From assembly GCA_002269645.1 (NCBI GenBank), contig NIVC01000001.1, positions 2,480,001 through 2,544,000 on the forward strand: a stretch of DNA of 64,000 nucleotides, in the 5' to 3' direction. Numbering within the stretch: position 1 is the stretch's first letter; every line of letters starts with the position of its first letter. Positions 1,683 through 49,792 of the stretch are shown piece after piece. Below the pieces are notes generated by a model. It was not told the DNA's origin. It was given only the letters and a program-made list of their open reading frames with translations, and made no database searches. Source of the stretch: Macrostomum lignano (taxonomy: Eukaryota). The position numbers and the translations under genes were made by a program.

Positions 1683-2291
1683 CGTACCTACCACCTGAAC
1701 AAGAACGGGCTTTGGTCACATCGCGGCAGAATGGCACAGTTCCTGGTCTCTTCGCCAAGGCAACGAGGAGGAGGAGATACTCCAAACGATCACTGACTGC
1801 TTGTCATCTGCAGCTAGGATTCCAAGGCATTCGACTCGGTCCGTCAGATCTGTGTTTTCCCTATGGTGTGTATAACGCGCCATGCAGAAAGCTATAGTAC
1901 ATGTATAGGCAGCATGGTTAATTTCCGCCATTTGGCGACGTACCGCGACACGAAGGCTTTTTTCGAGACATCCTCTGAGCTGCACGGTTCCTGTTTGATC
2001 TGGTGCTTGGTTTGGGAGCTGCGGACTGTTCTTCGCACTTTCTGCTGCGGTGACGCGTGGGTCGCCAACCGGAGAGAGAAGTCGACTTCTCTGTGAGCTT
2101 AGCTACTCCAATGATCTCACCCTGCTCTCCTCGACCGTTGAGGACGCCCAGCGATAGTTGGACAAACTGTAGTTGTTGTTGCAGTGGTTGTGGTCAATAG
2201 AGAAGACATGTATTATGCAGTGTGCTCGTGTGCTTGACGCCATATATCGTCGTGCCGTGCGCGTGACATTCATGATTATCAGCAGTTCATC
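1683..2291 (+). mobile_element. Highly degenerate RTE-type LINE RT fragment (paralogue of 7640-8290)
   Basis: Colinear similarity by eye to the second copy. Examples: GGCATTCGACTCGGTCCGTCAGATCTGTG vs GGCATTCAGACTCGGTCGTCAGGTCTGTG; GACGCGTGGGTCGCCAACCGGAGAG vs GACGCGTGGGTCGACGTCAACCGGAGAG; TCAGCAGTTCATCT vs TCAGCAGTTCGTCT. Confidence 0.75.
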
Positions 2292-2499
2292 TGGCCCTTG
2301 TCGAATGAGGTTCTTGAGTGTTTCCAGGAGGCTGTTGGTAGTGGTGCAGTCGGTTTGGATGGCTCGGATGGCGGCCTGGCTGTCAGTCAGGATGGTGGCT
2401 TCTGGCGGTTCCTCCGCTAAGATGTCGCCCAGACAAAGGGCGTGGAGCTCAGCTTCAAAGAAGCTGCACCATCTGCCGGCCGCAGCACGCCCCGTACGG

Positions 2500-3454
2500 A
2501 GGGTGCTGCAGTCCCAGCCCCACTCTCTGTGGGCCAGGGCGCGGAGGATGCTGCATCGGCGGTGCATCTTCGAAACAACTTCGGCCGTCTGACGCTTGAA
2601 GGTAAGGCCATCGTCTATCCAGACGCCAAGGTAGCGGACTTCTCTCTTGGTGGGGAGTCGGGTGCCGGTAATTGACAGGTTCAGGGGGCGATTTCGTTCA
2701 CTTCGGTCGCGCGAATACAGGCAGCATTCAGACTTAGAGGGGTTGAGATCGATTCTCAAGTCAGCAGCCCAGTCTTCAATGCGGTTGAGAGCGGACTGAA
2801 TGCGAGATACCAGGTCGTTTATAGTGCATCGACCGGTAGTCCAAATTTCGAGGTCATCGGCGAATCCCCCGTAGCAAACCTGGGGGACCAGTTTGTCCCG
2901 CCAGTCGTTGATGTACAGGAGAAACAAGAAAGGAGAGCTGACGGCCCCCTGGGGCACCCCCTCGCGGAGGGGCCGCCACTTGCCGACCGCCTTGCCAACG
3001 CGCACTGCGATTTGACGCCCTTCAAGGAAGCTGGCGAACCAACGAATAATACGGCCGAGCAGACCCTCGTCCATAAGACGAGCCAGGAGCAATTGGCCCG
3101 CCAGACTCGGTCAAACGATCTGGAGCAATCGAGCGTGACGGCCAGCGTCTTGAGGTGGGGCTTTCTTCCCCATCCGTCCTGGATTTCTTGCACAAGACGG
3201 GCTATTTGTTCCTCACAGCTCCGGCCGCGTTAAAATCCCGCTTGCCAGGGCTGCAGAGTTCCGTTGGTCTCAAGCCAGTGCATCAGCCGGTCAAGCACCA
3301 TACGCTCCATGAGTTTAACACAGATGGACGTAAGGCTGACGGGGCGGAAACTGGAGCAATCTTTGAAGTCTTTCCCATCTTTCAAAGCAGGCACGATGAT
3401 GGCCTTCTTCCAGACTCTTGGACAGTGGCCGAGGCTCCAATAGCGATTTAACAA
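2500..3454 (-). pseudogene. Reverse transcriptase domain of the Ingi-like LINE (three frames)
   Basis: ORFs 3230-3454, 2819-3193 and 2103-3092 together give IIVPALK..FRPVSLTSICVKLMERMV..QAGF..LDCSRSFDRVW..GVPQGAVSSPFLF..FADD..YLGVW. Confidence 0.9.
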
Positions 3455-4237
3455 CTTGAGCCAGGCCAGTTACCAGGATGTCGGCAGGTTCTTGAGAAAG
3501 GCGGCTTCAATATCATCCGGGCCACACTTTTTGGTGACATCCAGCTTGCACAAGGCGCGCTGAAGCTCTCAGGGTGAACTGGCTTTTGTGGTCGGTGTTG
3601 CCCAGGGGGTAATCCTTCAGTCTCTTAGCGGTCTCAACCTTGAAGGCGCGGTCTCGGGCGTCATGTTTGAGAGAGCTGATTGACGCGTAGAAAGGCCCAA
3701 AGGCGTTGGACTTTTCCAGGTCCGTGCGGTGTTCGCGGTTATTAATAACGATGTTTTCATTTTTTGGCCGTCTTCTTATCTTCGGTCTCCAGGGTCTTGA
3801 TCGTTCGCCAAATCTTCTTTGGGTCGGATGAGGATGAGAGGTCCTGAACGTAGGATTTCCAGAACTCCTGTTTCTTTTCAGCGCAGCGCTTGTTGAGTTC
3901 CGCATTCTTGCAGCGCCAGGCCTCGGAGTCGTCCAGACTTCTGAGCCGGTTCCGTTCTTCACGAATGCAAGTAAGGTTTATGGCTTCCGCCGACTTTCTT
4001 GAGCGAGATACTGTCGCTGACAGCCTTAGACGTTCTTTTGCAAAGACGGTCAACTTGTTCTTTGATGGTACCCTTGTTGAGGTCATCGCACCATTCCTCG
4101 AGCCTGTCCTGGTAGCCGGTCCAGTCGGCTTTCTTCCAGGCCTAGGTAAGGCGGGAGTGCTGATCCAGGGTTTGACAATCAGTGTTGAGCGTGATCAGGA
4201 TAGGTTTATGGTAAGACCCCAGCTCGTTAAGAGTCTT

Positions 4238-4817
4238 TCAGGTGCAGTGGTCAGCCACACTAGCACTGGCGAGGCTGAGGTCGGGCACGCTCTCACCTCT
4301 TGTGCGACGATCGAGGCACGTGGGAGCACCGGAGTTCATGACGTTGTAGCCGTAGGCGTCGCACCACTGTAGGAGCGAGCAGGCCTGAGCCGCTCCCTCG
4401 GGTCCCTGGTCCGGCAGGCTGCCCCAGTTGACGTGATGCAGATTGAGGTCGCCCAGGATGAGCTCACGTTTATGCGGCTTGAGCCAGGCCTCGACAGGGG
4501 GGTGCTCCCGGTGGTCGACACTCGCAGAGCGACGAATGGGGGGCGGTAGATGTTGGAGATCACCAGCCTGAGCTTGCTCGAGCAGCTGATGACTACCCTG
4601 CAACCTTCCACGGTATTTCCGCTCCAGCCTCTGATCTTGCGGAACGGGATGTCATGACGGATGAAGAGGAGCAGCCCTCCCCCTTTGTTGGTCTCACTCG
4701 AGCGGAGGCATCGCCGATCTTTGCGGACGGTGGAGAAGCCTGGGATCTTAGCAGTGCGAGCGAGAGAATCAGCGTGGACTCCTGAATGGCGACCACGCTG
4801 ATGTTCAGCCGCCGCAC
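4238..4817 (-). pseudogene. Apurinic-like endonuclease (APE) domain of the Ingi-like LINE
   Basis: NISVVAIQESTL, LVISNIYRPP, LILGDLNLHHVNWGS and YNVMNSGAPT..PDLSLAS are spread over three frames. Confidence 0.85.
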
Positions 4818-4864
4818 CTGATCTTCAAGCTCTCCCAGTTATTGCGTATGCTGTCGGCGTTCCA

Positions 4865-5614
4865 TTAGAGCAAGCGGATGAGCGTGTTTCCACGGTTCCA
4901 TCCTTTTTTGCGCTCCCGTTGTGGCTCGTCCGATGTTGGGTCCGGCTCAGTTGGGGAGCCCGGGGCCATGGCGTGGCGAAGAGCCTCCGAGCAGCCGGGG
5001 CAACGCCATTGGCCTCGACGGACTTCACCGTTGTTCTGATCTCTGGTGGCCATGGTGCAGGCATTGTGAAAAAGGGCCTCACACGTGTTGCAGCAGGCAA
5101 TCACCGTGGAGACCCGGACAGCCTTCTTGCACCGCCCGCAGAGAGGTTTTTCTTCCTCGAGACGATTAAGCAGGTGTAGGCGTCTCTCGTCAGGGTCGAT
5201 CGGCGGAGAGCAGAGACTGACCCCGCCATGCGTCGTGGGTTCATCTCGAGATTGTGGGCTCTGGAGTTCAGTCTCATCAGATTGATCTTGGCTGCTATTT
5301 TCATGTTGGCAGCCGGGGCACGACCAGGGTTCACCACAGGCAGTTTTGTTGGCAGCCCAGTGGGTCAGGCCCGAGCAGGCACGTTGGAGATGATACCCAT
5401 GGTTACAGCTGCGGCATTCGAGGAACCTGCCGCGGAGAGTCCTTCCGCAGTGGTGATGGTTGAAGGTTCGGTGAGGTCCAGGATTTGTTTCGACATCTCC
5501 GGCCCTACACAGCAGCATCTTGGGAAGGTAGTGGGCCACCTCGCTACCCTCCCCCCTCGGAGAAAACGTCGCAGGGTTGCCGCTGACTGTTGGTATAACT
5601 AGTCGATGGGACAC
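4865..5614 (-). pseudogene. N-terminal segment of the LINE ORF: 2A peptide followed by two PHD-like zinc fingers
   Basis: LLCRAGDVETNPGP, then CGRT..CRSC..H..C..WSCPGC, then CGRC..CCNTC..FHNAC..WRCPGC (C4HC3). Confidence 0.8.
5474..5518 (-). other. 2A-like ribosomal skipping (StopGo) peptide
   Basis: Translates MLLCRAGDVETNPGP, matching the D(V/I)ExNPG/P consensus. Confidence 0.85.
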
Positions 5615-5629
5615 TGGGTGTCCGAATTT

Positions 5630-5794
5630 CCGGCGCTCTTCGACACCTGTTGGATTGGGTGCCTCCCCTCTGCGACGTAGACGCGGCGCCGGGTAGGAGC
5701 TAGAGCCTCGGCTCCAGGCCGTCCGTAAAGGCCGACGGGCGCTGTGGTTGTTGCTGTTGCTGTTGTTGGATGCGGTGAGCCTACCCTAGAAAGG
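5630..5794 (-). ncRNA. HDV/CPEB3-like self-cleaving ribozyme in the LINE 5' region
   Basis: P2 CCGGCGCC (5692-5685) pairs with GAGCGCCGG (5638-5630). P3 GCG/CGC, L3 UCUACGU, P1' AGAGGGG, P1.1 AG pairing with L3 CU, P4 GCACC/GGUGU, J4/2 CGAA with catalytic-position C at 5642. Candidate P1 strand CCUUUCU at 5794-5788. Confidence 0.72.
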
Positions 5795-5899
5795 ACACCA
5801 GCCGATGGCCCTAGGAGAAGCGCCACCACGTCGGCGCGAGCGAGATCCCTTAATCTGTAAATGCCGTAAATGCTGAGATTTAAGGGCCGGACAGTTCGA

Positions 5900-6265
5900 A
5901 GATGTTGTTTTTGTTGCTGTTATTGTCGTTGTTGTTGTTGCCGATGTTGTTGTTGTTGTTGTTGTTATTATTTTTGTTGATGTTGTGTGTGTGTAACGCT
6001 CCACAAGCTGCTGCTGCCTCTCTCTCCTCCTCTTCCTAGTTGTAGGCCATCTCCAAAATTCCAACGCCTTCCCGGCCCTGCTGTTCAGATGTCTAAACTT
6101 TCTAATGTCCATCTCCATCTTCTTCCGCGTAGCCTGGCAGTTCATTAGGTGCTCGACAGTCTCCTCCTCCTCCTTGCACTCGCTACAGCTGCTCTCCACA
6201 GTTCTACCTATTATTGCTGCTGCTGTTGTTGTCGTTGTTGTTGTTGCTGTTGCTGTTGTCGTTGC
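5900..6265 (-). mobile_element. Isolated LINE 3' end (C-terminal CCHC knuckle) flanked by (CAA)n-type tracts
   Basis: CSECKEEEETVEHLMNC (CX2CX8HX3C)...ALEFW at about 6050-6190. (TTG)n-rich tracts on plus at about 5903-5990 and 6215-6265. Confidence 0.65.
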
Positions 6266-7054
6266 TTTGTACATGCACACATACATGTACCAGCTCTGTT
6301 GATACCATATATCTATGTACGTACATTTTAAAGTGTAGCTTTATGTAGTTACAGCTGTGGCTTGCACTGGTCTCACCACGAGATGTGCCACGTATATTCG
6401 ATAATGTACTTCAGATTGTGCATATTAGAATATTCAGGGTAAGGAGCGAGTAGTTAGGAGTTGAGTGCTGTCTTGTTGTTGTTGTCGAATCCCGCGATTC
6501 GACAAGCGAGGGAAGAGCTGGAGAGACTCCGTTTGAGCAGGTGACCAACCCGCGAGGCATAGGAGACCTTGGCGGCTGTCTATCTACTGAACTATTTTAA
6601 ATATAGTGTTGTGTGGTCTCTCACTACTTTGGCTCTATGTCTACTTCGGATCAATTTGAGAGCCAAATAACTGAGGCGGCGGTTTCTGGTTGTTTGAGTG
6701 AACCGAAGGTTCAGTCTATTAAGAAGAGAGGGTTGTTTAACAATTCAAGGTTCAGTGCGTCATAGTTCTGGTATTTTGGGTGAGACTCTAGCTGTTTCAA
6801 TCAAAAGTAATTCTTAGATAGCTAACAAATAGCTAATGGCAAAAAGAGGGCAAAAGAAAGGCGAGATTCTTGCTTTGTTAACATCGGATTTTATAGTAAT
6901 TTTCAGTCTTGATCGCATTGGGTGGTACATAACTACTTTTCATTGGCTGAGATTGAGGTCGTGTCCGCAGCCTTTGCTAGTTGAAGCGCGTTCATTGGTT
7001 GGAAATACATTCAAACTGGATTGAAGCTTTCAGGGCCAAAATTTATCACTTCAC

Positions 7055-8862
7055 TACAGCGCCAGCAGGATGCTGTTGATGACGCCATTCGGGCCGTCTC
7101 TGCCGCTGGGCCCGATGCCAGAGGCCGCGTGGCCTGGTCGGCTATCAATGCTCTGACGGGGCGAAAGCGGCGCATTCCGCTAAACCTGGCAGGCGAGTCT
7201 GCGGACGAGCGCAGGAACGAGTTGCGTGAGTTCTTCGCCGCCATTGTCAACGCGCCGCCACCCCCGCTGCCAGACAGTCTGACGCTGCCGCCGGAGATGC
7301 CGTTGCCGGCAGAGGAGAGCTTCAGCCTAGCAGCCTAGCTCACAGCCGACGTTGTGAGGCTCGCCCAACAGTCACCGGGCGGGAAAGCGCTGGGTTCGGA
7401 CGAGGTGCCCATCGAGGCGCTGCGCATCCATTGTGTGGCCAGTAAGGTCACCAGAGTGATAAATCGCGTGCTCTTCAGTGAGGAGGCATCCAACGAATAA
7501 ACCACGGCGCACATCGTCCCAGTTCCTAAGAAGCCGGGCACCACAGGGCTTGAGGAGCATCGAGGTATCTGCCTTAAGTCCTGCGCTGCGAAGTTGTTCA
7601 ACCAAATGCTGCTATCGCGGTTGCAGCCCGTGTTGGATCCGTACCTGCGCCATGAGCAGAACGGCTTCCGGCCCCATCGCGGCACAGTGACGCAGATCCT
7701 AGCTCTTCGGCGAGTCGATCCTGGTTGTTATCTTCATAGATTTCAAGAAGGCATTCAGACTCGGTCGTCAGGTCTGTGCTCCCAAAGGTGCTACGAGTAC
7801 AACGTGCCAGAGCAGCTGATTTCCGCCATCATGGCGATTACCGTGATACGAAAGCTGCTGTTTCGTAGCTGCTGAAACGAACACCGGACGGCCGATCAGA
7901 CTTCTTTGAGACATCCTCCGGGGTGCTTTAGGGAGAAACGCTTGCGCCGTTCGTGTTCGTTCTGGTGCTTGACGGGGTGCTGCGGACCGTTCTTCCTACC
8001 AACGACGACGGCTTTCTGTTGCGGCGACGCGTGGGTCGACGTCAACCGGAGAGGCGGCTCAGCGTGCTTGGCTACGCCGACGACCTCGCCCTGCTGTCCC
8101 CAACTGTCGAGGGCGCCTAACGACAACTGGACAAGCTAGTTGCTGTTGCGGCGAGTGTCGGCGAGTGTCGGTTAACACGCAGAAGACCGTCGTGCTCTGC
8201 GTGCCGAACGACATCGAGGCAGCGATTTTGTGCCGAGGCGCTGATGGACAGGCGACCGAGCTCCCGCGATGTCAGCAGTTCGTCTACCTCGGCGGTCTGG
8301 TTCCCGGCGTCCGCGAGGATTTGCGGCGTCGCCGCGGGCTTGCCTGGGCTGCCTTTCGTTGTGTGAGGGCAGTCCTGCAGTCCGAGGCCTTACCCGACCG
8401 CCAGAGGGCGGCGTTGTTCCAGGCGGTGATCGAGACCGTCCTGCTGTACAACGCCGAGACCTGGACGCTGACGGAGTCGCTCGAGCAACAAGTTGACGCA
8501 GCGCACGCTGGCCTGCTGTGTGCCGCCTTCAAGATCGGCTACGAGCGAGTGACCAACGCGGCTCTGTATAGCCACGCCGGCCTGGTCCGTCCAAGCGACC
8601 TGCTGCGCTGTCGGCTACTCCAGCTGGCAGACCACATCATCCGCGTCGAGTCGTACTGCCCAGAGCCGGTGCAGGAGGTGCTGCTGCTCACGCTGCAGGC
8701 ACCCTACCGGCGGGGACAGGCGCGCACTCGGCGTTTCGTCGACTGCCTGCTGGCTGACGCCGGCGCCCCGCATTCGGCCGGCGGCGTGGCGATCATCCGC
8801 GACCTGGCCTTGAGGCGCGCCCTGTGACGCTAACCTGCGTATTCTGTTGTTGTTGCTGTCTT
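7055..8862 (+). mobile_element. 5'-truncated, frameshifted RTE-clade LINE
   Basis: HIVPVPKK..EHRGICL..KLFNQML..LRHEQNGFR, GYADDL and the RTE-type C-terminus FVYLGG..DLRRRRGLAWAAF..ETVLLYNAETWTLT. It ends in a short (GTT)n tail at about 8846-8858. Confidence 0.85.
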
Positions 8863-26828: not shown

Positions 26829-27544
26829 GGGGCTTTGGGATCGAACTGGCTGGCTGCTGGGTGTTCGGGCGGATTTGCTCGGTTTTGCGCGGCTGTCCTG
26901 GTTGCTGAGGGGGCAGGCAGGCGGGCGGGGGTTTAAGCTCCCTCGGGCTTTTTGCCTGAAACACTCTGGGGGGAGAGAGGAGCAGCTGCGGGGAAGAGGG
27001 AGAGAATGGGACGCCAGAACAAATGCTCAGAGCCAGTTCTGCAACCGATGCAGGACCACCAGGTGAACTGCGCTCTCGCGGCAGGCTGAGTGGGGTGGCT
27101 GGCCTTGCCTGCTAAATGTGTCTCTTTTGCAATAGGAGAGAAAGAGAACGAAAAGGGGGGTACAGGCAACACAAAGGGCTTTCAAAACAATGGAATGGAG
27201 AGAGAGGGAGGGAAGAGCGAAGCAGATACGCTCGGAGGGAGGAAGTGGAGGGTTTGTCGTCACCTCACGCCCCCCCCCCCTAGAAGAGCTTCTCCGGTTA
27301 TAGCAGCCCATGGCCCAGGCCTTCCCCAGCCTCTCTGCTCCATCTCTACTCTCCATCCCTCCCGCAGCCAACCGAAGCGGCTGCCCCGCGACCCCATGGA
27401 AACGGGGCGTGGAGAACTCGGGGACGGATTCAAAGCGGAAACGAGCATTAGTGCCGGTTTGAGCACTCGGGCATTCCGTGCCTAGGAAATTGTATTAATG
27501 CAACTCTGGCCTGGCAGACAGATGCATTGTTTGGTTGATGGATG

Positions 27545-28300
<756 letters not shown>

Positions 28301-37845: not shown

Positions 37846-39733
<1,888 letters not shown>

Positions 39734-46449: not shown

Positions 46450-49400
46450 GACTCTTCCTCTCCCTCCCCGACTCTTCCTCTCCCTCCCCGACTCTTCCTC
46501 TCCCTCCCCGACTCTTTCTCTCCCTCCCCGACTTTTCCTCTCCCTCCCCGACTCTTTCTCTCCCTTCCCGACTCTTCCTCTCCCTCCCCGACTCTTCCTC
46601 TCCCTCCCCGACTTTTCCTCTCCCTCCCCGACTGTTCCTCTCCCTCCCCGACTCTTCCTCTCCCTCCCCGACTCTTTCTCTCCCTCCCCGACTCTTCCTC
46701 TCCTCCCCGACTCTTTCTCTCCCTCCCCGACTTTTCCTCTCCCTCCCCGACTCTTCCTCTCCCTCCCCGACTCTTCCTCTCCCTCCCCGACTCTTCCTCT
46801 CCCTCCCCGACTCTTTCTCTCCCTCCCGACTTTTCCTCTCCCTCCCCGACTCTTTCTCTCCCTTCCCGACTCTTCCTCTCCCTCCCGACTCTTCCTCTCC
46901 CTCCCCGACTTTTCCTCTCCCTCCCCGACTGTTCCTCTCCCTCCCCGACTCTTCCTCTCCCTCCCCGACTCTTTCTCTCCCTCCCCGACTCTTCCTCTCC
47001 CTCCCGACTCTTTCTCTCCCTCCCCGACTTTTCCTCTCCCTCCCCGACTCTTCCTCTCCCTCCCCGACTCTTCCTCTCCCTCCCCGACTCTTCCTCTGCC
47101 TCCCCGACTTTTCCTCTCCCTCCCCGACTCTTCCTCTCCCTCCCCGACTCTTCCTCTCCCTCCCCGACTCTTTCTCTCCCTCCCCGACTCTTCCTCTCCC
47201 TCCCCGACTTTTCCTCTCCCTCCCCGACTCTTCCTCTCCCTCCCCGACTCTTCCTCTCCCTCCCGACTCTTCCTCTCCCTCCCCGACTCTTCCTCTGCCT
47301 CCCGACTTTTCCTCTCCCTCCCCGACTCTTCCTCTCCCTCCCGACTTTTCCTCTCCCTCCCCGACTCTTCCTCTCCCTCCCCGACTCTTCCTCTCCCTCC
47401 CCGACTCTTCCTCTCCCTCTCCGACTCTTCCTCTCCCTCCCGACTTTTCCTCTCCCTCCCCGACTCTTCCTCTCCCTCCCCGACTCTTCCTCTCCCTCCC
47501 CGACTCTTCCTCTCCCTCCCCGACTCTTCCTCTCCCTCCCCGACTCTTCCTCTCCCTCCCCGACTCTTCCTCTCCCTCCCCGACTCTTTCTCTCCCTCCC
47601 CGACTTTTCCTCTCCCTCCCCGACTCTTCCTCTCCCTCCCCGACTTTTCCTCTCCCTCCCCGACTCTTTCTCTCCCTCCCCGACTCTTCCTCTCCCTCCC
47701 CGACTCTTCCTCTCCCTCCCCGACTCTTCCTCTCCCTCCCCGACTCTTCCTCTCCCTCCCCGACTCTTCCTCTCCCTCCCCGACTCTTCCTCTCCCTCCC
47801 CGACTCTTCCTCTCCCTCCCCGACTCTTCCTCTCCCTCCCCGACTCTTCCTCTCCCTCCCCGACTCTTTCTCTCCCTCCCCGACTTTTCCTCTCCCTCCC
47901 CGACTCTTCCTCTCCCTTCCCGACTCTTCCTCTCCCTCCCCGACTCTTCCTCTCCCTCCCCGACTCTTTCTCTCCCTCCCCGACTTTTCCTCTCCCTCCC
48001 CGACTCTTTCTCTCCCTCCCCGACTCTTCCTCTCCCTCCCCGACTCTTTCTCTCCCTCCCCGACTTTTCCTCTCCCTCCCCGACTCTTCCTCTCCCTCCC
48101 CGACTCTTCCTCTCCCTCCCCGACTCTTCCTCTGCCTCCCCGACTTTTCCTCTCCCTCCCCGACTCTTCCTCTCCCTCCCCGACTCTTCCTCTCCCTCCC
48201 CGACTCTTTCTCTCCCTCCCCGACTCTTCCTCTCCCTCCCCGACTCTTTCTCTCCCTCCCCGACTTTTCCTCTCCCTCCCCGACTCTTCCTCTCCCTCCC
48301 CGACTCTTCCTCTCCCTCCCCGACTCTTCCTCTGCCTCCCCGACTTTTCCTCTCCCTCCCCGACTCTTCCTCTCCCTCCCCGACTCTTCCTCTCCCTCCC
48401 CGACTTTTCCTCTCCCTCCCCGACTCTTCCTCTCCCTCCCCGACTCTTCCTCTCCCTCCCCGACTCTTCCTCTCCCTCCCCGACTTTTCCTCTCCCTCCC
48501 CGACTCTTCCTCTCCCTCCCCGACTCTTCCTCTCCCTCCCGACTCTTCCTCTCCCTCCCCGACTCTTCCTCTCCCTCCCCGACTCTTCCTCTCCCTCCCC
48601 GACTCTTCCTCTCCCTCCTTGACTCTTCCTCTCCCTCCCCGACTCTTCCTCTCCCTCCCCGACTCTTCCTCTCCCTCCCCGACTCTTCCTCTCCCTCCCC
48701 GACTCTTCCTCTCCCTCCTTGACTCTTCCTCTCCCTCCCCGACTCTTCCTCTCCCTCCCCGACTCTTCCTCTCCCTCCCCGACTCTTCCTCTCCCTCCCC
48801 GACTCTTTCTCTCCCTCCCCGACTCTTCCTCTCCCTCCCCGACTCTTTCTCTCCCTCCCCGACTTTTCCTCTCCCTCCCCGACTCTTCCTCTCCCTTCCC
48901 GACTCTTCCTCTCCCTCCCGACTCTTCCTCTCCCTCCCCGACTCTTCCTCTCCCTCCCCGACTCTTTCTCTCCCTCCCCGACTCTTCCTCTCCCTCCCCG
49001 ACTCTTTCTCTCCCTCCCCGACTCTTCCTCTCCCTCCCCGACTCTTTCTCTCCCTCCCCGACTTTTCCTCTCCCTCCCCGACTCTTCCTCTCCCTCCCCG
49101 ACTCTTCCTCTCCCTCCCCGACTCTTCCTCTGCCTCCCCGACTTTTCCTCTCCCTCCCCGACTCTTCCTCTCCCTCCCCGACTCTTCCTCTCCCTCCCCG
49201 ACTCTTTCTCTCCCTCCCCGACTCTTTCTCTCCCTCCCCGACTTTTCCTCTCCCTCCCCGACTTTTCCTCTCCCTCCCCGACTCTTCCTCTCCTCCCCGA
49301 CTCTTCCTCTCCCTCCCCGACTTTTCCTCTCCCTCCCCGACTCTTCCTCTCCCTCCCCGACTCTTCCTCTCCCTCCCCGACTTTTCCTCTCCCTCCCCGA

Positions 49401-49792
49401 CTCTTCCTCTCCCTCCCCGACTCTTCCTCTCCCTCCCCGACTCTTCCTCTCCCTCCCCGACTTTTCCTCTCCCTCCCCGACTCTTCCTCTCCCTCCCCGA
49501 CTCTTCCTCTCCCTCCCCGACTCTTCCTCTCCCTCCCCGACTCTTCCTCTCCCTCCCCGACTCTTCCTCTCCCTCCCCGACTCTTCCTCTCCCTCCCCGA
49601 CTCTTCCTCTCCCTCCCCGACTCTTTCTCTCCTCCCCGACTTTTCCTCTCCCTCCCCGACTCTTCCTCTCCCTTCCCGACTCTTCCTCTCCCTCCCCGAC
49701 TCTTCCTCTCCCTCCCCGACTTTTCCTCTCCCTCCCCGACTCTTCCTCTCCCTCCCCGACTCTTCCTCTCCCTCCCCGACTCTTCCTCTCCT
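46450..49792. repeat. 20-bp minisatellite (ACTCTTCCTCTCCCTCCCCG)n, about 3.3 kb, about 165 copies
   Basis: Direct reading; the largest array in the window. Confidence 0.97.

What the first reader, a model, noticed from the sequence alone, without database searches (positions are those of the whole stretch)
5630..5794. Candidate HDV/CPEB3-like self-cleaving ribozyme
Seen on minus: CCGGCGCC-GCG-UCUACGU-CGC-AGAGGGG-AG-GCACC-CAAUCCAACA-GGUGU-CGAA-GAGCGCCGG. P3/L3 nearly copies the CPEB3 ribozyme (GCG UUCACGU CGC). P1.1 has two compatible pairs (U-A, C-G), P4 has 5 bp, J4/2 is CGAA with the catalytic C at 5642, and P2 has 7 bp plus a bulged pair. P1' can pair 7/7 (two G-U) with CCUUUCU at 5794-5788 across a ~95-nt J1/2 containing hairpins; CUUCUCC at 5820-5814 is an alternative. 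A C at +1 matches the L1Tc ribozyme. The P1 assignment is inference.
Basis: partly seen in the sequence, partly recalled or inferred. Interest (0 to 1): 0.78.

Follow-up and report, generated by a model that had tools for sequence, protein, structure and literature searches.

The report
HDV-like ribozyme heading a decayed retrotransposon
The motif is a real member of a family of HDV-like self-cleaving ribozymes at the 5' end of a group of 2A-peptide-encoding non-LTR retrotransposons; this is a known kind of arrangement, and this copy is a decayed element whose cleavage-site helix is weak and only provisionally placed.

Summary
The pairing pattern alone is chance-level, at about one full match per shuffled 64 kb. 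No Rfam model hits it.

Comparative evidence supports the core. It lies about 195 nt upstream of an N-terminal 2A peptide (MLLCRAGDVETNPGP) in a frameshifted 2A-PHD-APE-RT-RNaseH non-LTR retrotransposon.

Homologous elements from metagenomes carry the same P2-P3-L3-P3'-P1'-P4-C(G/A/C)AA-P2' core, 163-195 nt upstream of their 2A site. P2, P3 and P4 co-vary fully.

Several relatives are compact canonical ribozymes. In them a 7-bp P1 starts exactly where homology between copies begins, right after a microsatellite.

A covariance model built from relatives only finds one hit in the window, at 5630-5692(-), with 26 bits and E about 1e-6.

P1 in this copy stays uncertain. It is followed by a 7-bp helix closing the 95-nt J1/2, a joint chance of about 0.5-1.4%. 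It lies in what looks like the 3' end of an upstream family fragment, as in R2 ribozymes that take P1 from upstream target sequence. An adjacent 5-bp alternative (5699-5695), or a dead relic, is not excluded.

Verdict: new member of a known kind; cleavage untested.

The parts
5788..5794 (-). Cleavage would be 5' of C5794. It coincides with the last codons and stop (CCT TTC TAG) of the ORF-like upstream fragment.
   Evidence: 7/7 pairs with AGAGGGG, two of them G-U. Duplex energy -6.4 kcal/mol. 27% chance on its own, 0.5-1.4% together with the closing helix.
5780..5786 (-). 5' strand (GGGUAGG) of a helix that would close the 95-nt J1/2 domain.
   Evidence: Perfect 7-bp complement of CCUACCC 5697-5691. 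Present in the MFE and centroid folds of 5685-5794. Energy -11.4 kcal/mol.
5741..5768 (-). CAA/CAG-type microsatellite.
   Evidence: Relatives end in (CAA)n tails.
5691..5697 (-). 3' strand (CCUACCC) of the J1/2-closing helix. It overlaps the first two bases of P2.
5695..5702 (-). Position where relatives have P1. UAGCUCC 5702-5696 resembles the P1 of L043 (CAGCUCC). CUCCU 5699-5695 can pair 5 bp with AGGGG 5669-5665.
   Evidence: L043; 7% chance; -5.5 kcal/mol.
5685..5692 (-). P2 5' strand, CCGGCGC, plus C5685.
   Evidence: P2 is 100% paired, with double changes in 6 of 7 pairs across 9 sequences.
5672..5684 (-). P3 (GCG/CGC) enclosing L3 (UCUACGU).
   Evidence: Relatives have GCC/GGC, ACC/GGU and GGG/CCC, with L3 UUCACGU or UCUACGC.
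5665..5671 (-). P1 3' strand, AGAGGGG.
5663..5664 (-). J1/4, AG. It forms P1.1 with C5680 and U5679 of L3.
   Evidence: P1.1 is paired in 72% of cells across the family alignment.
5643..5662 (-). P4 hairpin, GCACC-CAAUCCAACA-GGUGU.
   Evidence: The four basal P4 pairs are 100% paired and all co-vary.
5639..5642 (-). J4/2, CGAA, with candidate catalytic C5642.
   Evidence: The C and the two final A's are invariant in the 9-sequence alignment.
5630..5638 (-). P2 3' strand: G5638, bulged A5637, then GCGCCGG 5636-5630.
   Evidence: L043 has the same G-A-bulge layout.
5474..5518 (-). Start codon and 2A ribosome-skipping peptide, MLLCRAGDVETNPGP, at the head of the element's ORF.
   Evidence: About 35 relatives share it.
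2167..5518 (-). Decayed body of the non-LTR retrotransposon: two PHD-like fingers, AP endonuclease, reverse transcriptase and an RNase H remnant, with several frameshifts and a lost C-terminal domain. The CAA-type tail is at 2192-2167.
   Evidence: ORFs and Pfam hits. The intact relative L001 has PHD, Exo_endo_phos, RVT_1 and RNase_H. Sequence read.
2199..2205 (-). CUUCUCU in the element's own last codons (TGT CTT CTC TAT TGA), 6 nt before its tail. It is a second 7/7 partner for P1'.
   Evidence: The base rate of the pattern is 0.003 per nt.
5769..6205 (-). 3' fragment or fragments of related element copies lying head-to-tail upstream. It carries a C-terminal CxxC...ETVEHLMNC motif, an internal (CAA)n run at 5975-5905, a 135-nt piece ending TAG at 5788-5786, and a 17-nt UTR.

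Best explanation
The segment 5692-5630 on the minus strand is the catalytic core of an HDV-like (nested double-pseudoknot) self-cleaving ribozyme. It belongs to the 5' UTR of a single-ORF, 2A-PHD-APE-RT-RNaseH non-LTR retrotransposon with a (CAA)n tail.

In this family the ribozyme cuts the element RNA out of read-through transcripts, and so defines the element's 5' end. These transcripts often start in a neighbouring copy, because copies sit head-to-tail behind each other's tails.

Shown:
- the core is homologous to ribozyme cores of relatives, and its helices co-vary;
- in compact relatives P1 begins exactly where copies start to be alike.

Inferred:
- catalysis, with C5642 as the general acid/base;
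- the processing role.

It is brought next to P2 by a 7-bp helix (5786-5780 with 5697-5691) that closes a 95-nt J1/2.

That strand lies in what appears to be the stop-codon region of an upstream truncated family copy. The arrangement would therefore resemble R2 elements whose ribozyme takes P1 from the sequence upstream of the insertion site. The old, adjacent P1 survives as a relic at 5702-5696.

The copy is a fossil, with a frameshifted ORF, a weak P1 and a bulged P2. Its present activity is uncertain.
For: Context:
- The motif is in sense orientation, 195 nt upstream of the D codon of the 2A motif, at the head of a decayed element.

Relatives:
- 42 related loci were fetched.
- The same core lies 163-195 nt upstream of the 2A site in L014, L016, L018/19/21, L020, L025, L036, L037, L038, L041 and L043.
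- Canonical 7-bp P1 helices: L020 and L037 GCAGCAC/GUGCUGC, L041 GUUGGAC/GUCCAAC, L043 CAGCUCC/GGAGCUG, L009 CAGGAUC/GGUCCUG.
- L020 and L037 have unrelated upstream flanks and become alike exactly at the first base of P1.

Statistics:
- A covariance model built from 9 relatives without the window gives one hit in the window, 5630-5692(-), with 26 bits and E about 1.5e-6.
- Pair counts: 91% of cells are paired against 53% in shuffles and 37-43% when partners are slid. 22 of 23 pairs show changes on both sides. P2, P3 and P4 are 100% paired.
- L037 85-144 gives a sub-threshold hit to Rfam RF02682, an HDV ribozyme, in the right place.

P1 in this copy:
- A 7/7 partner plus a closing helix of at least 6 or 7 bp arises in 1.4% or 0.46% of shuffles.
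- The closing helix appears in the MFE and centroid folds.
- A second 7/7 partner sits in the element's own terminal codons.

Precedents:
- R2 ribozymes take P1 from upstream 28S sequence, have J1/2 loops of 216-498 nt, and shift their cleavage site when P1' drifts (PMC3774820).
- Long J1/2 domains need a closing helix that brings P1 and P2 together (PMC4908430).
- L1Tc combines an HDV-like ribozyme starting at C1 with an N-terminal 2A (PMC3185411; PMC3708506).
Against: - No cleavage data exist.
- No Rfam HDV-like model reaches even E = 10 on this segment.
- The pairing pattern alone is chance-level.
- P1 is weak in every register, -6.4 kcal/mol at best against -9 to -11 in intact relatives.
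- All relatives with a recognisable P1 have J1/2 of 0-13 nt. None has a long J1/2 holding a microsatellite.
- The closing-helix criterion was defined after the helix was seen.
- The closing helix competes with two base pairs of P2.
- The element's own 3' UTR lacks the GGGUAGG strand.
- The alignment used for pair counts was fitted by hand to the structure. Part of the training set was found with a pattern derived from the window's own L3 and J4/2.
- No paralogue from the same genome could be obtained, so the family's true 5' end is not known.
Confidence: 0.55

Rival explanations
1. The core is a genuine family member, but this copy is a dead relic. The ancestral P1 lay next to P2, where UAGCUCC now sits, and lost its partner when P1' mutated. 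The distant CCUUUCU and the closing helix are coincidences in the 3' end of an unrelated upstream fragment. No self-cleavage occurs.
For: - The element is frameshifted and truncated.
- Every relative with a clear P1 has it 0-13 nt from P2.
- Window 5702-5696 UAGCUCC matches the P1 of L043, CAGCUCC, at the same spacing.
- The nearest protein relative, L036, also shows a decayed P1, 5/7 pairs at -1.5 kcal/mol.
- A distant 7/7 partner alone is expected 27% of the time.
- The stretch holding the distant P1 looks like another copy's stop codon, UTR and tail.
Against: - The joint chance of a distant P1 plus a closing helix directly abutting P1 and P2 is only 0.5-1.4%.
- A second 7/7 partner occurs at the element's own ORF end.
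- The rest of the core is almost intact.
- Three substitutions within the 7-nt P1' would be many for a core that is otherwise conserved.
Confidence: 0.27
2. The ribozyme uses a short adjacent P1. CUCCU (5699-5695) pairs with AGGGG (5669-5665), leaving a 2-nt J1/2. Cleavage is 5' of C5699, and everything upstream is flank.
For: - The spacing from the start of P1 to P3, 15 nt, matches the 15-17 nt of compact relatives.
- L038 also seems to have only a 5-bp P1.
- The energy, -5.5 kcal/mol, is close to that of the distant P1.
Against: - Only 5 bp, with two unpaired bases between P3' and P1'.
- 7% chance expectation.
- P1 mismatches have been linked to loss of activity in HDV-like ribozymes (PMC3774820).
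- It leaves the 38-nt stretch between the microsatellite and P1 unexplained.
Confidence: 0.12
3. A chance arrangement of complementary stretches in a GC-rich 5' UTR, with no ribozyme in this element family.
For: - Descriptor matches are as frequent in shuffled sequence.
- Folding z-scores are not significant.
- Rfam is silent.
Against: - The same architecture recurs at a fixed position in at least eight divergent families, with compensatory changes in every helix.
- P1 coincides with the 5' boundary of element homology.
- The model trained on relatives only gives a single hit at E about 1e-6.
Confidence: 0.03

Closest known systems
L1TcRz, the HDV-like ribozyme in the first 77 nt of the Trypanosoma cruzi L1Tc non-LTR retrotransposon (Ingi clade)
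   Same: - An HDV-like fold at the extreme 5' end of a single-ORF APE-type non-LTR element.
- C at +1 (PMC3185411).
- The ORF begins with a 2A ribosome-skipping peptide (PMC3708506).
- The presumed role is release of the element RNA from longer transcripts.
   Different: - The host and the element differ: a GC-rich eukaryotic genome with relatives in metagenome assemblies, PHD fingers, and a (CAA)n tail instead of poly(A).
- There is no evidence here for promoter activity.
- In the window copy P1 is not at a demonstrable element start.
- Sequence homology to L1TcRz and the clade of the element were not tested.
R2 retrotransposon ribozymes
   Same: - An HDV-like ribozyme processes the 5' end from a co-transcript.
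- In many R2 lineages the 5' strand of P1 comes from sequence upstream of the element.
- J1/2 can be hundreds of nt long.
- Drift in P1' moves the cleavage site (PMC3774820).

   Different: - R2 has a restriction-like endonuclease and inserts in 28S rDNA. This element has an AP endonuclease and sits behind (CAA)n tails.
- The upstream partner here would be another copy's 3' end, not a host gene.
Mammalian CPEB3 ribozyme
   Same: - The P3/L3 sequence is nearly identical. The window reads GCG UCUACGU CGC. A mouse Cpeb3 primer reads G UUCACGU CGC (PMC10274809).
- Relatives L020, L036 and L041 have exactly UUCACGU as L3.
- From memory, CPEB3 also has CGAA as J4/2.
   Different: - CPEB3 is a single-copy intronic ribozyme in mammals, with a 7-nt P1 directly before P2.
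- No Rfam CPEB3 hit was obtained even at E = 10.
- The element context is different, so this is resemblance and not membership.
drz-Agam-2-1 and other large HDV-like ribozymes with a structured J1/2 (P1.2) domain
   Same: A helix within J1/2 that brings the ends of P1 and P2 together is what makes large ribozymes fast (PMC4908430). The window has a 7-bp helix in exactly that place.
   Different: - Here the domain would hold a microsatellite and two further hairpins.
- It overlaps P2 by 2 nt.
- It is not conserved in any relative seen.

Membership tests
HDV-like self-cleaving ribozymes (nested double pseudoknot) | P3 of 3 bp closing an L3 of about 7 nt, with the 3' strand of P1 following P3' directly | tested here: met
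   GCG-UCUACGU-CGC followed directly by AGAGGGG. P3 is 100% paired and all three of its pairs co-vary across 9 sequences.
HDV-like self-cleaving ribozymes (nested double pseudoknot) | P2 joining the segment before P3 to the 3' end, after J4/2 | tested here: met
   7 bp, plus a C-G pair across a bulged A. Relatives have entirely different P2 sequences at the same place: GUCCCC/GGGGAC, GAUCGG/CCGAUC, GUUGGG/CCCAAC, GAUGCA/UGCAUC and others. P2 is 100% paired.
HDV-like self-cleaving ribozymes (nested double pseudoknot) | P1 of about 7 bp whose first nucleotide is the cleavage site, forming the pseudoknot with P2 | tested here: inconclusive
   In the window there are three candidates: 7/7 at 95 nt, 5 bp adjacent, and 6/7 at 5820. 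All are weak. The feature is clearly met in relatives L020, L037, L041, L043, L009, L022 and L004.
HDV-like self-cleaving ribozymes (nested double pseudoknot) | P1.1: two pairs between L3 and J1/4 | tested here: met
   C5680-G5663 and U5679-A5664. 72% of cells are paired across the family alignment.
HDV-like self-cleaving ribozymes (nested double pseudoknot) | A catalytic cytosine opening a short J4/2 after P4 | tested here: met
   C5642 in CGAA. This C and the two final A's are invariant in the 9-sequence alignment. Only its presence is shown, not its role.
HDV-like self-cleaving ribozymes (nested double pseudoknot) | Mg2+-dependent self-scission giving 2',3'-cyclic phosphate and 5'-OH ends | not testable with these tools
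HDV-like self-cleaving ribozymes (nested double pseudoknot) | A match to a curated Rfam HDV-like model (HDV_ribozyme, CPEB3_ribozyme, drz-Agam, HDV-F-prausnitzii) | tested here: not met
   No hit at gathering score or at E up to 10 on 221 nt. Relative L037 reaches 25.4 bits against RF02682, whose gathering score is 44. These models are narrow and cannot score the pseudoknot.
Retrotransposon 5'-end processing ribozymes (R2, RTE, baggins, L1Tc type) | Sense orientation at the 5' end of a non-LTR element, with the cleavage site at the 5' boundary of element homology | tested here: inconclusive
   Orientation and 5' UTR position are met. The boundary test is met in relatives (L020 against L037). 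It could not be run for the window's own family, because no paralogue was found.
CPEB3 ribozyme family (mammalian intronic) | Orthology to the CPEB3 intron ribozyme, or a match to its Rfam model | tested here: not met
   No Rfam hit. The context is a retrotransposon 5' UTR. Only the P3/L3/J4/2 sequence is alike.

The most novel reading that the evidence does not exclude
In this family the ribozyme has shifted its substrate strand into the 3' end of the copy lying upstream. That 3' end comprises the last codons and stop, followed by the 3' UTR and the (CAA)n tail, and these now form a structured J1/2.

Elements that insert behind each other's tails would then use a neighbour's ORF end as P1, as R2 uses 28S rRNA. 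The processed RNA would carry a copy of the family's 3' terminus at its 5' end, which could guide attachment of the 5' junction at the next tail.
Probability: 0.3. Interest if true: 0.6.

Novelty: new member of a known kind. Interest (0 to 1): 0.45.

Why it matters
HDV-like ribozymes are already known at the 5' ends of R2, RTE, baggins and L1Tc elements, so the principle is not new.

What is added is a sizeable, previously undescribed set of such ribozymes. They occur in 2A-encoding, PHD-bearing, (CAA)n-tailed non-LTR elements that are common in metagenome assemblies. The paper that described 2A sequences in metazoan non-LTR elements does not mention ribozymes (PMC3708506). No Rfam model detects these ribozymes.

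The pairing of a 5' HDV-like ribozyme with an N-terminal 2A peptide was known from trypanosome L1Tc. It now appears as a recurring module for making and translating uncapped, promoter-less element RNAs.

The compact relatives (L020, L041, L043) are ready-made test substrates of about 70 nt.

If the upstream-copy P1 model holds, it would be a second, independent case of the R2 strategy of borrowing P1 from the insertion target.

Tried and rejected
- Rfam at gathering score on the whole window, and at E up to 10 on 901 nt and 221 nt, gave no HDV-like hit.
- A very permissive descriptor gave hundreds of meaningless hits and was dropped.
- Repeat search and BLAST of the 5' region against the window found no second copy, only CAA-repeat matches.
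- A protein search with the N-terminal ORF returned nothing. An exact look-up of that ORF was not on record. The source genome and paralogues could therefore not be obtained.
- MAFFT on raw ribozyme sequences misaligned them. I used N-padded, hand-segmented rows instead.
- Thermodynamic z-scores were uninformative in this GC-rich sequence.
- I tested whether the 135-nt upstream piece encodes a recognisable C-terminus of relatives. There was no significant tblastn match. Only the layout of TAG, a short UTR and a CAA tail, plus a weak TGTCYTYTCTA similarity, supports that reading.
- L018/19/21 has no P1 partner next to P2 or in its conserved leader. One exact partner 175 nt upstream in L021 is absent from L018, so I treat it as chance.
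- L001, the L005/6/8/12/39 family and L040 gave no ribozyme that I could parse.
- L023 and L044 have a core with a co-varying P2, but their P1 is ambiguous.
- The paper by Ruminski et al. 2011 was not held in the library.

Full report
**Observation.** On the minus strand the sequence reads as the finding says.
- P2: CCGGCGC(C) at 5692-5685.
- P3: GCG at 5684-5682.
- L3: UCUACGU.
- P3': CGC at 5674-5672.
- P1': AGAGGGG at 5671-5665.
- J1/4: AG.
- P4: GCACC-10 nt-GGUGU at 5662-5643.
- J4/2: CGAA at 5642-5639.
- P2': G, bulged A, then GCGCCGG at 5638-5630.

C5680 and U5679 of L3 can pair with G5663 and A5664 to form P1.1. CCUUUCU at 5794-5788 pairs 7/7 with P1', with two G-U pairs.

**Chance expectation.** As a bare pairing pattern the motif is not remarkable.
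- A descriptor loosened just enough to accept the bulged P2 finds core-like loci at roughly the rate seen in shuffles.
- About one complete match, with a 7/7 P1 within 150 nt, is expected per shuffled window.
- Because P1' is G-rich, any YYYYUYU heptamer pairs with it. Such a partner occurs within 158 nt upstream in 27% of shuffles.
- Rfam gives nothing, neither at gathering score nor at E up to 10 on a 221-nt slice.

**Context.** The motif lies in the 5' UTR, in sense orientation, of a decayed non-LTR retrotransposon on the minus strand.
- An ATG at 5518 opens directly into a 2A ribosome-skipping peptide, MLLCRAGDVETNPGP.
- Two PHD-like fingers follow, then an AP endonuclease, a reverse transcriptase and an RNase H remnant. 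These are broken by frameshifts.
- A CAA-type tail follows at 2192-2167.
- An intact relative, L001, has the same order: 2A, PHD, Exo_endo_phos, RVT_1, RNase_H and a (CAA)5 tail.
- Upstream of the motif lie 3' fragments of related copies. They carry a C-terminal CxxC...ETVEHLMNC motif and CAA runs.
- Head-to-tail arrangement is also seen in relative L020.

**Relatives.** A scan of metagenome contigs with the N-terminal alignment gave 33 loci. Protein searches plus contig look-ups added more.

A P3-L3-P3' hairpin with L3 U[UC][CU]ACGN was then seen in L018/19/21 and L020, 176-178 nt before the 2A motif. The window's lies 190 nt before it. Reading these and later loci gave full ribozymes:

| Locus | P1 | J1/2 | P2 | link | P3 | L3 | P3' | P1' | J1/4 | P4 | J4/2 | link | P2' |
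|---|---|---|---|---|---|---|---|---|---|---|---|---|---|
| L020 445-516 | GCAGCAC | u | GUCCCC | a | ACC | UUCACGU | GGU | GUGCUGC | gg | 8-bp stem | CGAA | - | GGGGAC |
| L041 | GUUGGAC | aaga | GUUGGG | - | ACC | UUCACGU | GGU | GUCCAAC | ga | present | CGAA | - | CCCAAC |
| L043 | CAGCUCC | acaga | GGAU | c | GGG | UCUACGC | CCC | GGAGCUG | ac | present | CCAA | g-a | AUCC |
| L036 | GAGAUGC | uuc | GAUUC | u | GCC | UUCACGU | GGC | GCACCCU | gu | present | CGAA | au | GAAUC |

- L037 has the same ribozyme as L020.
- L014, L016 and L025 have 6-bp P1 helices that co-vary: AGUCCG/UGGACU, GCUUCC/GGAAGU and AGACCA/UGGUCU.
- L009, L022 and L004 have CAGGAUC/GGUCCUG-type P1 and a CCC/GGG P3.
- In L020, L041, L036 and L009 the P1 follows a microsatellite directly.
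- L020 and L037 have unrelated upstream sequence and become alike exactly at the G that opens P1. That is what a 5'-end-defining ribozyme predicts.

**Formal tests.**
- I segmented nine relatives by hand, padded them with N so that MAFFT left them ungapped, and built a covariance model of P2, P3 and P4 without the window.
- On the whole window, both strands, at E up to 10, the model has one hit: 5630-5692(-), with 26 bits and E about 1.5e-6.
- That score is in the middle of the range of its own training sequences. The model also finds the untrained L038.
- All hits start 163-195 nt before the 2A motif.
- On a nine-row alignment that includes the window, with P1 and P1.1 written as pseudoknots, 91% of cells pair. 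The figure is 53% in column shuffles and 37-43% when partners are slid.
- 22 of 23 pairs change on both sides. P2, P3 and P4 are 100% paired, and P1 is 81% paired.

Two caveats apply. The alignment was fitted to the structure, and some relatives were first spotted with a pattern taken from the window. However, the helices, their positions and the P1 at the element boundary were not selected for.

**The P1 problem.** Relatives place P1 0-13 nt before P2. In the window that place holds UAGCUCC (5702-5696), close to the P1 of L043 (CAGCUCC). It pairs poorly with AGAGGGG. A shifted register, CUCCU 5699-5695, gives 5 bp at -5.5 kcal/mol, with a 7% chance expectation.

Both are far weaker than the -9 to -11 kcal/mol of intact relatives.

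Two things speak for the distant P1.
- First, one base after it, GGGUAGG (5786-5780) is the exact complement of CCUACCC (5697-5691), which abuts P2. This helix closes the 95-nt J1/2 and appears in the MFE and centroid folds. A distant P1 plus such a helix of at least 6 or 7 bp arises in 1.4% or 0.46% of shuffles. The criterion was set after I saw the helix. Large HDV-like ribozymes need just such a helix to bring P1 and P2 together (PMC4908430).
- Second, the stretch holding P1 reads TGT CCT TTC TAG, then a 17-nt UTR, then a CAA-type tail. This is the layout of 3' ends in L001, L002, L005, L006 and L020. The element's own 3' end reads TGT CTT CTC TAT TGA, then its tail, and there CUUCUCU (2205-2199) is again a 7/7 partner for P1'. 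The base rate of the pattern is 0.003 per nt.

This fits a model in which the family's P1' pairs with the family's ORF end in the copy lying upstream. It is comparable to R2 ribozymes that take P1 from upstream 28S rRNA, have J1/2 loops of 216-498 nt, and move their cleavage site when P1' drifts (PMC3774820).

Several points speak against it.
- No relative shows it.
- The helix costs two P2 pairs.
- The 135-nt piece has no significant protein match to relatives.
- No paralogue was available.

**Mechanism.** The following steps are inferred from established knowledge of HDV-like ribozymes and of R2 and L1Tc.
- The element has no evident promoter of its own and is transcribed by read-through, often from a neighbouring copy.
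- The 5' UTR folds into the double pseudoknot.
- C5642 in J4/2 acts in general acid-base catalysis with Mg2+.
- The RNA is cut 5' of P1, leaving a 5'-OH on the element RNA.
- The uncapped RNA is then translated, and the 2A peptide releases a very short leader from the PHD-APE-RT polyprotein.

Only the fold and its conservation are shown here.

**Comparison and novelty.** Ribozyme-headed non-LTR elements are well documented: R2, RTE, baggins and L1Tc (PMC6765202).
- L1Tc also has C at +1 and an N-terminal 2A.
- The P3/L3 sequence nearly equals that of the CPEB3 ribozyme, but Rfam's CPEB3 model does not match. I therefore file it as an HDV-like ribozyme and not as a CPEB3-family member.
- The paper on metazoan 2A-bearing non-LTR elements describes the 2A-PHD-APE organisation but never mentions ribozymes.

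The finding is a new member, and by extension a new subfamily, of a known kind. The specimen in the window is a decayed one.

Noticed in passing
window 5474-5518 (-): The element's ORF opens with a canonical 2A ribosome-skipping peptide, MLLCRAGDVETNPGP, directly at the start codon. About 35 related elements from metagenomes share it.
   Followed up: partly
window 11263-63595: About 50 kb is an almost unbroken series of some 40 different micro- and minisatellite arrays. Units are 4-93 nt and arrays 0.2-3.3 kb, for example (TCTG)n, (GATA)n at 27537-28286 facing (TATC)n at 37846-39733, and a 20-mer repeated 168 times at 46450-49791. Each array has its own unit, and short spacers separate them.
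   Followed up: no
window 7021-8827 (+): A second, different reverse-transcriptase-bearing element fragment lies on the opposite strand. It shares 69% nucleotide identity with the first over 218 nt of RT.
   Followed up: no
window 5769-6286 (-): Head-to-tail 3' fragments of related copies lie upstream of the ribozyme, separated by CAA runs at 6265-6212, 5975-5905 and 5768-5741. One frame stays open through all of them and ends at TAG 5788-5786.
   Followed up: partly
window 2194-2208 and 5786-5797 (-): The two ORF ends in the window, TGT CTT CTC TAT TGA and TGT CCT TTC TAG, are alike. Each holds a 7/7 partner for the ribozyme's P1' just before a CAA-type tail.
   Followed up: partly
L018 334-395, L019, L021: Three near-identical contigs carry the ribozyme core, but have no P1 partner near P2, a 2A motif mutated to NPGQ, and a stop five codons later. 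The inserted DNA seems to begin with TAGCTA(CAA)n inside a G-rich satellite.
   Followed up: partly
L023 93-187 and L044 (homologous stretch): This subfamily has a conserved extra hairpin of about 33 nt between P2 and P3. P2 co-varies fully (GGUGCUC/GAGCACC against GAAGACU/AGUCUUC), and a conserved leader lies upstream of P2.
   Followed up: partly
L022, about 330-260 nt before its 2A site: Its ribozyme (CAGGAUC ... CCC GUACCGC GGG GAUCCUG ... CGAA) appears to lack a P4 stem.
   Followed up: no
L005, L008, L012, L039 (5' ends): In this related family, homology between copies begins right after a (CAG)n run, at ...UAGUUGGACCGUUCGGCGGACAUG. I could not recognise an HDV-like fold there.
   Followed up: partly
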